NCBI RefSeq assembly: GCF_016433145.1 | Contig: NC_058133.1 | Location: 456,890,928 to 456,951,594 of the forward strand | Reading direction: 5' to 3' | From: Gracilinanus agilis | Lineage: Eukaryota | DNA length: 60,667 bases | Part shown: positions 4,001 through 4,087 of the stretch, piece after piece | How positions within the stretch are numbered: position 1 is the stretch's first letter | How the letters are laid out: each line of letters begins with the position of its first letter | Notes under the pieces: generated by a model | Databases searched by the model: none | What the model saw: only the letters and a program-made list of their open reading frames with translations | What the model was told of the DNA's origin: nothing | Made by a program: the position numbers and the translations under genes

Positions 4001-4087
4001 CTGACCAGAAAGGAGTGGAAGAAGGGGGAACAAAGCTGTAGTCTGGAGGAGGAGTTACAAAAGAAAACCCACAGAACAAAGAAGGGG
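4001..4087 (-). CDS. VAV3: VAV3 alternative cassette exon, 87 nt, phase 1-1: (S)PSLFCGFSFVTPPPDYSFVPPSSTPFWS(V)
   Basis: Long polypyrimidine tract cttctctctttttctttctttttttcctctaag|, donor TCAG|gtactg. Length is divisible by 3, there is no stop, and the phase matches the flanking exons. It resembles the insert I recall in a human VAV3 isoform and the VAV2 insert ending PFWSV. Confidence 0.88.

What the first reader, a model, noticed from the sequence alone, without database searches (positions are those of the whole stretch)
4038..4052. The cassette exon adds a PPxY (PPPDY) WW-domain ligand motif to VAV3
Seen: codons CCT CCT CCA GAC TAC give PPPDY, embedded in a Ser/Thr-Pro-rich, probably disordered segment (VTPPPDYSFVPPSSTP). 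Established: PPxY is the canonical ligand of group I WW domains (NEDD4-family E3 ligases such as NEDD4/ITCH/WWP/SMURF, YAP/TAZ, WWOX), and phosphorylation of the Tyr can abolish WW binding. The recalled VAV2 insert lacks this motif. Inference: splicing could act as a switch that couples VAV3 to ubiquitin ligases or Hippo effectors in some tissues. I do not know of this being described. The third Pro may be a lineage-specific CCT codon expansion.
Basis: inference. Interest (0 to 1): 0.7.

Follow-up and report, generated by a model that had tools for sequence, protein, structure and literature searches.

The report
PPxY motif in optional VAV3 exon
The PPPDY motif is really encoded in an ancient, already annotated optional exon of the opossum VAV3 gene, but across vertebrates the rest of the exon is conserved better than the motif, so a role as a WW-domain docking site stays an untested and weakened idea.

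Summary
Observation confirmed. On the minus strand, 4052-4038 reads CCT CCT CCA GAC TAC (PPPDY). It lies in frame in an 87-nt exon (4001-4087) between the last SH2 exon and the first C-terminal SH3 exon of VAV3.

- **Already annotated.** The window's exons are identical to the 875-aa Monodelphis domestica VAV3 entry. Mouse RefSeq "VAV3 isoform 3" and many predicted isoforms carry the same exon.
- **Ancient.** The exon is present from sharks to mammals and is paralogous to the VAV2 linker exon, which has SPQGL at this place.
- **Third Pro.** It is marsupial-specific (3 of 3 marsupials, 0 of 56 other species).
- **PPxY is not invariant.** It occurs in 23 of 59 species: all 11 therians and basal ray-finned fishes. 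It is absent in all 24 teleosts, frogs, sharks, echidna, Galliformes and 4 of 7 squamates. The first Pro of the motif is the most variable exon column in tetrapods. The invariant core is SF.PPS..PFWS.
- **Overlap with a splice site.** The Pro codons form an internal acceptor (CCTCCTCCAG|AC). Annotated short isoforms in macaque and Anolis use it and drop the motif.
- **Structure.** AlphaFold2 gives the segment low confidence, as expected for disorder.

WW binding is untested, and no paper found links VAV3 to it. RNA use in this animal could not be checked.

The parts
4038..4052 (-). Codons CCT CCT CCA GAC TAC = PPPDY, the formal PPxY match. The first CCT is the marsupial-specific extra codon.
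   Evidence: 3-nt indel against colugo and an unnamed species
4001..4087 (-). Long form of the optional VAV3 exon (87 nt, 29 codons, phase 1-1). It encodes (S)PSLFCGFSFVTPPPDYSFVPPSSTPFWS(V).
   Evidence: identical to P0224 residues 783-811; orthologues in 59 species
4001..4042 (-). Short form (42 nt, in frame) if the internal acceptor is used. It would give YYSFVPPSSTPFWS(V), without PPxY.
   Evidence: sequence; the same 14-aa insert is annotated in Macaca nemestrina X2 (P0368) and Anolis carolinensis X2 (P0236)
4043..4070 (-). Internal 3' splice site: a pyrimidine-rich run ending in CCTCCTCCAG. It overlaps the Thr-Pro-Pro-Pro-Asp codons.
   Evidence: CAG at this place also in colugo, L001 and catshark, not in Coilia
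4088..4125 (-). Upstream 3' splice site of the long form: a long polypyrimidine tract and an AAG acceptor. It is conserved with colugo and L001.
3989..4000 (-). 5' splice site CAG|gtactgctttac. It departs from the consensus at +4 to +6. The gtac[ta]g form is kept from shark to mammals.
18362..18491 (-). Constitutive upstream exon (end of SH2 and start of linker, ELVEYYKHH...GNRASSN plus 1 nt).
1551..1702 (-). Constitutive downstream exon (end of linker and first part of the C-terminal SH3, LSPKVLGIAIARYDF...).
29209..29325 (-). SH2 exon of VAV3 (YAGAMERLQ...AISIK), given for orientation.

Best explanation
The PPPDY codons lie in the long form of an ancient, alternatively spliced exon of opossum VAV3. 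The exon is 87 nt here and 84 nt in other vertebrates. It inserts 28-29 residues, rich in aromatic residues, Pro and Ser, into the low-confidence linker between the SH2 and the C-terminal SH3 domain. The exon is a paralogue of the VAV2 linker exon and is already present in annotated isoforms. PPPDY is a true regex match to the PPxY motif, and its extra Pro is a marsupial CCT insertion. What selection keeps in this exon is mainly something else: FCGFSF and above all SF.PPS..PFWS, which are shared with teleosts and sharks, and PFWS with VAV2, all of which lack PPxY. The Pro-Pro-Asp codons also spell an internal 3' splice site that yields a shorter insert without the motif. Inferred mechanism: the cassette as a whole acts as a regulated linker module. 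It may lengthen or re-tether the C-terminal SH3, which takes part in the closed, autoinhibited state and in partner binding, or it may offer a conserved aromatic docking peptide. PPxY is at most an added WW ligand restricted to some lineages (therians, many sauropsids, basal ray-finned fishes).
For: - **Shown, exon and frame:**. Identity to the Monodelphis 875-aa isoform is, and the skipping isoform of the same species (P0352).
- **Shown, annotation:** mouse NP_001365916.1 'VAV3 isoform 3' and many predicted isoforms hold the exon.
- **Shown, paralogy with VAV2:** same place, same phase, ends in PFWS|V, same CAG|gt donor.
- **Shown, conservation:** PPxY occurs in 23 of 59 species, with at least 7 independent departures. 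The first Pro of the motif (column 14) is the most variable column of the exon in tetrapods (77%, entropy 1.21). C6, G7, S18, F19, P21, P22, S23, P26, F27, W28 and S29 are kept in 98-100% of the 59 species.
- **Shown, short isoforms:** the internal acceptor is used in annotated isoforms of macaque and Anolis.
- **Shown, DNA-level constraint:** opossum and colugo differ by 1 substitution in 84 nt plus the CCT indel. About 60 nt of upstream and 25 nt of downstream intron are conserved.
- **Shown, structure and domains:** the linker has pLDDT 26-44 and no Pfam domain lies between SH2 (671-745) and SH3 (822-873).
- **From the literature:** the C-terminal SH3 contacts the DH and PH domains in the closed state, and nothing is known about the signalling of Vav isoforms (PMC4601183).
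- **Inferred:** the tether or docking mechanism.
Against: - All 11 therian mammals sampled keep P-P-x-Y while x varies (D, G, E). This is the pattern expected of a real PPxY ligand.
- Basal ray-finned fishes also have PPGY, so the motif may be ancestral to bony vertebrates.
- The tether or docking mechanism has no direct evidence here. AlphaFold2 shows no confident docking of the cassette onto any domain.
- Many orthologue isoforms are computational predictions, and I have no RNA evidence for this animal.
- The species sample comes from the best 120 hits of profile searches, not from a designed sampling.
Confidence: 0.65

Rival explanations
1. In species that have it, PPxY in the long cassette is a working ligand of class I WW domains (NEDD4-family E3 ligases, YAP/TAZ, WWOX). 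Exon inclusion, and the choice between the outer and inner acceptor, then switches VAV3 turnover or Hippo coupling on and off.
For: Exact PPxY match, PPPxY in marsupials. The segment has low confidence and is probably accessible. The motif is kept in 11 of 11 therians with a variable x, in 4 of 6 birds, 2 of 2 turtles and 3 of 3 basal ray-finned fishes. An annotated short isoform removes exactly the PPx part.
Against: The motif is lost in teleosts (0 of 24), frogs, sharks, echidna, Galliformes, Anolis, gecko and cobra, while the exon stays conserved. The first Pro of the motif is the most variable column in tetrapods. The paralogous VAV2 exon has no PPxY. Shuffled peptides of the same composition give PPxY in about 5% of cases. 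No paper links VAV3 to WW proteins other than in gene lists. Spliced VAV3 fragments assembled from public runs all skip the exon.
Confidence: 0.18
2. The Tyr, not PPxY, is the functional residue. [DEG]-Y-S-F-V would be a tyrosine phosphorylation site or SH2 docking site, or an aromatic contact within a larger docking peptide.
For: Tyr is kept in 92% of 59 species, including teleosts and frogs that lack PPxY. The following S-F is 98-100% conserved. An acidic residue precedes Tyr in tetrapods.
Against: Sharks and Galliformes have Phe and echidna has Cys at this place. VAV2 has Leu. This fits an aromatic or hydrophobic role better than phosphorylation. No phosphoproteomic data could be consulted.
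Confidence: 0.15
3. The conservation of the Pro-Pro-Asp codons is mainly an RNA-level constraint. CCTCCAG|AC is the pyrimidine tract and AG of the internal acceptor and lies among splicing enhancers. The peptide motif is then a by-product.
For: Between opossum and colugo, 1 of 84 exon nucleotides differs, so synonymous sites are almost unchanged, and the flanking intron is conserved. Short isoforms that use this AG are annotated in a primate and a lizard. A CAG is also at this place in catshark, coded by different residues (Ala-Ser).
Against: The teleost Coilia has no AG at this place although the exon is kept. Amino-acid conservation extends to lineages with different codons. The two short isoforms are predictions whose abundance is unknown.
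Confidence: 0.2

Closest known systems
VAV3 long isoform already on record (Monodelphis domestica UniRef A0A5F8H3V2, 875 aa; mouse RefSeq NP_001365916.1 'VAV3 isoform 3', 875 aa; many predicted X1 isoforms)
   Same: The same exon at the same place. The opossum entry is identical to the window's spliced peptide.
   Different: Nothing differs in sequence. No paper in the searchable library describes the exon's function or its PPxY match.
VAV2 SH2-CSH3 linker exon (ASCASYNFSFLSPQGLxFxSQxxSxPFWS)
   Same: Paralogous exon: same position and phase, FSF and PFWS|V blocks, same CAG|gt donor, optional in both genes.
   Different: It has SPQGL where VAV3 has PPDY, so no PPxY and no Tyr at that place. 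It is found in two of four assembled VAV2 transcript fragments, whereas all assembled VAV3 fragments skip their exon.
Class I WW-domain ligands (PPxY or PY motifs, as in targets of NEDD4-family ligases and YAP; own knowledge of the motif class)
   Same: Core P-P-x-Y in a low-confidence, Pro-rich segment of a cytosolic signalling protein.
   Different: No binding evidence. The motif is not kept in most vertebrate lineages that keep the exon, and the first Pro is the most variable exon column in tetrapods.
VAV2 15-nt neuronal microexon (PMC12626424)
   Same: An optional exon of a Vav gene with a measured effect on Vav activity (about threefold in an SRF reporter). It shows that small Vav splice inserts can matter and gives a ready assay.
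   Different: It lies near the RhoGEF domain, not in the SH2-CSH3 linker, it is 5 residues rather than 28-29, and it is unrelated in sequence.

Membership tests
PPxY ligand of class I WW domains | Sequence P-P-x-Y | tested here: met
   PPPDY at 4052-4038 on the minus strand
PPxY ligand of class I WW domains | Lies in an accessible, disordered segment outside folded domains | tested here: met
   AlphaFold2 pLDDT is 26-44 over the linker and cassette. The segment lies between Pfam SH2 (671-745) and SH3 (822-873). Low confidence suggests disorder but does not prove it.
PPxY ligand of class I WW domains | Motif conserved among orthologues that keep the segment | tested here: not met
   23 of 59 species have it. 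It is absent in teleosts, frogs, sharks, echidna, Galliformes and 4 of 7 squamates, and kept in 11 of 11 therians.
PPxY ligand of class I WW domains | Direct binding to a WW domain that depends on Pro and Tyr | not testable with these tools
   No binding assay or complex prediction was available, and no report was found.
Optional (cassette) exon of VAV3, paralogue of the VAV2 linker exon | AG and GT borders, length a multiple of 3, phase fits both neighbours | tested here: met
   The exon spans 4001-4087 (87 nt) with phase 1 at both ends.
Optional (cassette) exon of VAV3, paralogue of the VAV2 linker exon | Both inclusion and skipping forms on record | tested here: met
   Monodelphis P0224 (inclusion) and P0352 (skipping). 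Dog-family, macaque, mouse and Anolis entries show both forms.
Optional (cassette) exon of VAV3, paralogue of the VAV2 linker exon | Orthologous exon in other vertebrates and homology to the VAV2 exon | tested here: met
   59 species from sharks to mammals; alignment with VAV2; exon DNA in colugo, catshark and Coilia.
Optional (cassette) exon of VAV3, paralogue of the VAV2 linker exon | Spliced into RNA in this animal | not tested
None of the runs holding the stretch is on record as RNA.

The most novel reading that the evidence does not exclude
In therian mammals and other amniotes, VAV3 has a three-state splice switch in its SH2-CSH3 linker: skipped, short insert through the inner acceptor (no PPxY), and long insert (with PPxY). 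Only the long form would recruit WW-domain proteins such as NEDD4-family ligases or YAP/TAZ, which would give tissue-specific control of VAV3 stability or Hippo cross-talk.
Probability: 0.12. Interest if true: 0.6.

Novelty: new member of a known kind. Interest (0 to 1): 0.3.

Why it matters
A review of the Vav family states that nothing is known about the signalling of Vav splice isoforms (PMC4601183). This exon is one of the most conserved parts of the VAV3 tail at both the DNA and the protein level, from sharks to mammals, and it has a VAV2 counterpart. Yet it has no described function. If PPxY were a working WW ligand, it would link a Rac exchange factor to ubiquitin ligases or Hippo effectors in an isoform-specific way. 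My results suggest that the more promising target is the invariant SF.PPS..PFWS core and the placing of the C-terminal SH3, with PPxY as a secondary, lineage-limited feature.

Tried and rejected
- **RNA evidence.** I therefore have no junction evidence for this animal. Those places were sent to no search tool afterwards. Only local scripts that read the whole window file touched them.
- **Sequencing runs.** The look-up of sequencing runs listed 23 small runs that hold the exon plus or minus 20 nt, none on record as RNA. I draw no conclusion from them.
- **Representative library.** A search with the neighbouring 43-aa exon returned mostly short genomic ORF fragments and no full-length VAV3. It was useful only for first VAV2 and VAV3 fragments.
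- **Word search.** A search with the 67-aa open frame around the exon found a single relative, P0107.
- **42-nt exon as the only real exon.** I considered that the exon might start at the inner acceptor, so that PPP would be mere intron. I rejected this because the upstream half is conserved as protein from sharks to mammals and in VAV2. It remains as a second, alternative form.
- **Folded docking of the cassette.** AlphaFold2 does not support docking onto SH2 or SH3.
- **PxxP ligand.** The cassette contains no PxxP motif (by inspection).
- **Literature.** Searches for VAV3 with PPxY, NEDD4, WW domain, cassette exon or exon inclusion gave only co-mentions in gene lists.

Full report
**1. What is in the sequence.**
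- The gene runs on the minus strand. Open frames show VAV3 exons: an SH2 exon at 29209-29325, the last SH2 exon at 18362-18491, and the first C-terminal SH3 exon at 1551-1702.
- Between the last two lies a stretch bounded by ctctaag| and CAG|gtactg, at 4001-4087 (87 nt).
- The upstream exon ends one base into a codon (…AAC T|gtgagt). The downstream exon starts with two bases (|TG TTG AGC).
- With the 87-nt exon spliced in, the reading is ASSN-SPSLFCGFSFVTPPPDYSFVPPSSTPFWSV-LSPKVLG. Skipping it also keeps the frame.
- The codons at 4052-4038 are CCT CCT CCA GAC TAC, which is PPPDY.

**2. Which gene and animal.**
- A profile search returned full-length VAV3 proteins.
- The 875-aa Monodelphis domestica entry (P0224, UniRef A0A5F8H3V2) has exactly this linker and insert.
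- Its exons match the window at 100% apart from boundary effects. The window is therefore the 3' part of opossum VAV3 or of a very close relative.
- A skipping isoform of the same species is also on record (P0352).
- Pfam places SH2 at residues 671-745 and the C-terminal SH3 at 822-873. The insert, at 783-811, is in the linker and is covered by no family.

**3. The exon is known to annotation and is ancient.**
- Cluster look-ups show the insert in mouse RefSeq NP_001365916.1 ("VAV3 isoform 3", 875 aa). It is also in macaque, slow loris, shrew, bats and the dog family, next to 847-aa skipping forms.
- It is present in birds, turtles, squamates, frogs, bichir, sturgeon, paddlefish, teleosts and sharks.
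- VAV2 carries a paralogous exon at the same place and phase (…SP-ASCASYNFSFLSPQGLxFxSQ..S.PFWS-V), with the same CAG|gt donor seen in genomic read-through fragments.
- The exon therefore predates the VAV2/VAV3 split.

**4. Is PPxY conserved?** I took one sequence per species, 59 species in all.

| Group | Species with PPxY | Sequence at the motif place |
|---|---|---|
| Marsupials | 3 of 3 | PPPDY |
| Placentals | 8 of 8 | PPDY, PPGY, PPEY |
| Echidna | 0 of 1 | PPDC |
| Birds | 4 of 6 | PPDY; quail and pheasant PPDF |
| Turtles | 2 of 2 | PPDY |
| Squamates | 3 of 7 | PPDY; two Anolis species and a gecko SPDY, cobra LPDY |
| Frogs | 0 of 3 | APEY, EPEY |
| Basal ray-finned fishes | 3 of 3 | PPGY |
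| Teleosts | 0 of 24 | mostly PAGY |
| Sharks | 0 of 2 | PAGF, AASF |

- In tetrapods the first Pro of the motif is the most variable column of the whole exon (77% identity, entropy 1.21).
- By contrast C6, G7, S18, F19, P21, P22, S23, P26, F27, W28 and S29 are kept in 98-100% of all 59 species.
A therian- or amniote-restricted function stays possible.
- The third Pro is confined to the three marsupials. At the DNA level it is a CCT insertion relative to colugo and to an unnamed species.
- Shuffles of the peptide give PPxY in about 5% of cases, so the match alone carries little weight.

**5. Overlap with splicing signals.**
- The motif's codons read …ttttgtaactcctcctccag|AC TAC AGC. This is a good pyrimidine tract followed by CAG.
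- Splicing there gives a 42-nt in-frame exon encoding YYSFVPPSSTPFWS(V).
- Exactly this 14-aa insert is annotated in Macaca nemestrina isoform X2 (861 aa) and Anolis carolinensis isoform X2 (860 aa).
- Three forms are thus on record: skipped, short without PPxY, and long with it.

**6. Conservation at the DNA level.**
- The opossum and colugo exons differ by one substitution in 84 nt plus the CCT indel.
- About 60 nt of upstream intron and 25 nt of downstream intron are also conserved.
- The donor departs from the consensus at +4 to +6, and its gtac[ta]g form is kept from catshark to mammals.
- In my experience this pattern is usual for regulated optional exons. It means that protein-level and RNA-level constraints cannot be separated at the Pro codons.
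- A CAG sits at the inner site in catshark as well, with other residues, but not in the teleost Coilia.

**7. Structure.**
- I ran AlphaFold2 on NSH3-SH2-cassette-CSH3 with a 42-row alignment.
- The three domains are confident. The linker and cassette have pLDDT 26-44, and no docking is predicted.
It neither supports nor excludes binding on contact with a partner.

**8. Usage.**
- Among spliced VAV3 fragments assembled from public runs, all that span the junction skip the exon. Two of four VAV2 fragments include theirs.
- This suggests that the VAV3 long form is minor or tissue-restricted, but assemblies drop rare forms.

**9. Literature.**
- No paper in the library links VAV3 with PPxY, WW domains or NEDD4 beyond gene lists. 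None describes this exon.
- A Vav review states that nothing is known about the signalling of Vav splice isoforms. It also states that the C-terminal SH3 contacts the DH and PH domains in the closed state (PMC4601183).
- A 15-nt VAV2 microexon changes VAV2 activity about threefold in an SRF reporter (PMC12626424). That gives a ready assay.

**10. Verdict.**
- The PPxY reading is a legitimate, cheap-to-test hypothesis that the conservation pattern weakens. I put it at about 0.18.
- The better-supported view is that the cassette as a whole, and above all its invariant SF.PPS..PFWS core, is the functional unit. It most likely acts on the tethering or partner binding of the C-terminal SH3. That mechanism is inferred, not shown.

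**11. Caveats.**
- Many orthologue isoforms are computational predictions.
- The species sample comes from the best hits of profile searches built partly from PPDY-bearing sequences.
- The Logan contigs L001-L003 are of unknown species. I do not take them for human, because only five contigs in the whole index carry that open frame.

Noticed in passing
window 3989-4125 (-), compared with L006:67870-68120 and L001:1090-1330: The exon and its flanks are almost unchanged at the nucleotide level between opossum and colugo: 1 substitution in 84 exon nt plus a 3-nt indel. About 60 nt of upstream and 25 nt of downstream intron are conserved, so synonymous sites are under constraint.
   Followed up: partly
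window 3995-4004 (-); L004 and L005 at the same exon end: The 5' splice site of the optional exon (CAG|gtactg) lacks the usual G at +5. Nearly the same form (gtacag or gtactg) is found in catshark, a teleost and mammals.
   Followed up: partly
window 28573-28728 and 36554-36705: Two N runs. Residues 711-739 of the opossum protein (an SH2 exon) found no match in the window, and the first N run lies in the interval where that exon is expected.
   Followed up: no
I sent them to no search tool afterwards.
   Followed up: no
window 1-153 (-): Simple repeat that reads as (KEGR)n in one frame, a GA-rich microsatellite at the window's edge.
   Followed up: no
P0236 cluster: The 90% cluster of Anolis VAV3 isoform X2 also lists about a dozen 28-53-aa Campylobacter coli fragments (DUF4492 or membrane protein). 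This looks like an artefact of the protein collection's clustering and has no bearing on the finding.
   Followed up: no
P0156 (Scyliorhinus canicula, L004:3361-3432): A catshark protein named 'VAV2-like' by its source carries a VAV3-type cassette (FCGFSFLTAASFSFLPPSSAPFWS), so the name is probably wrong.
   Followed up: no
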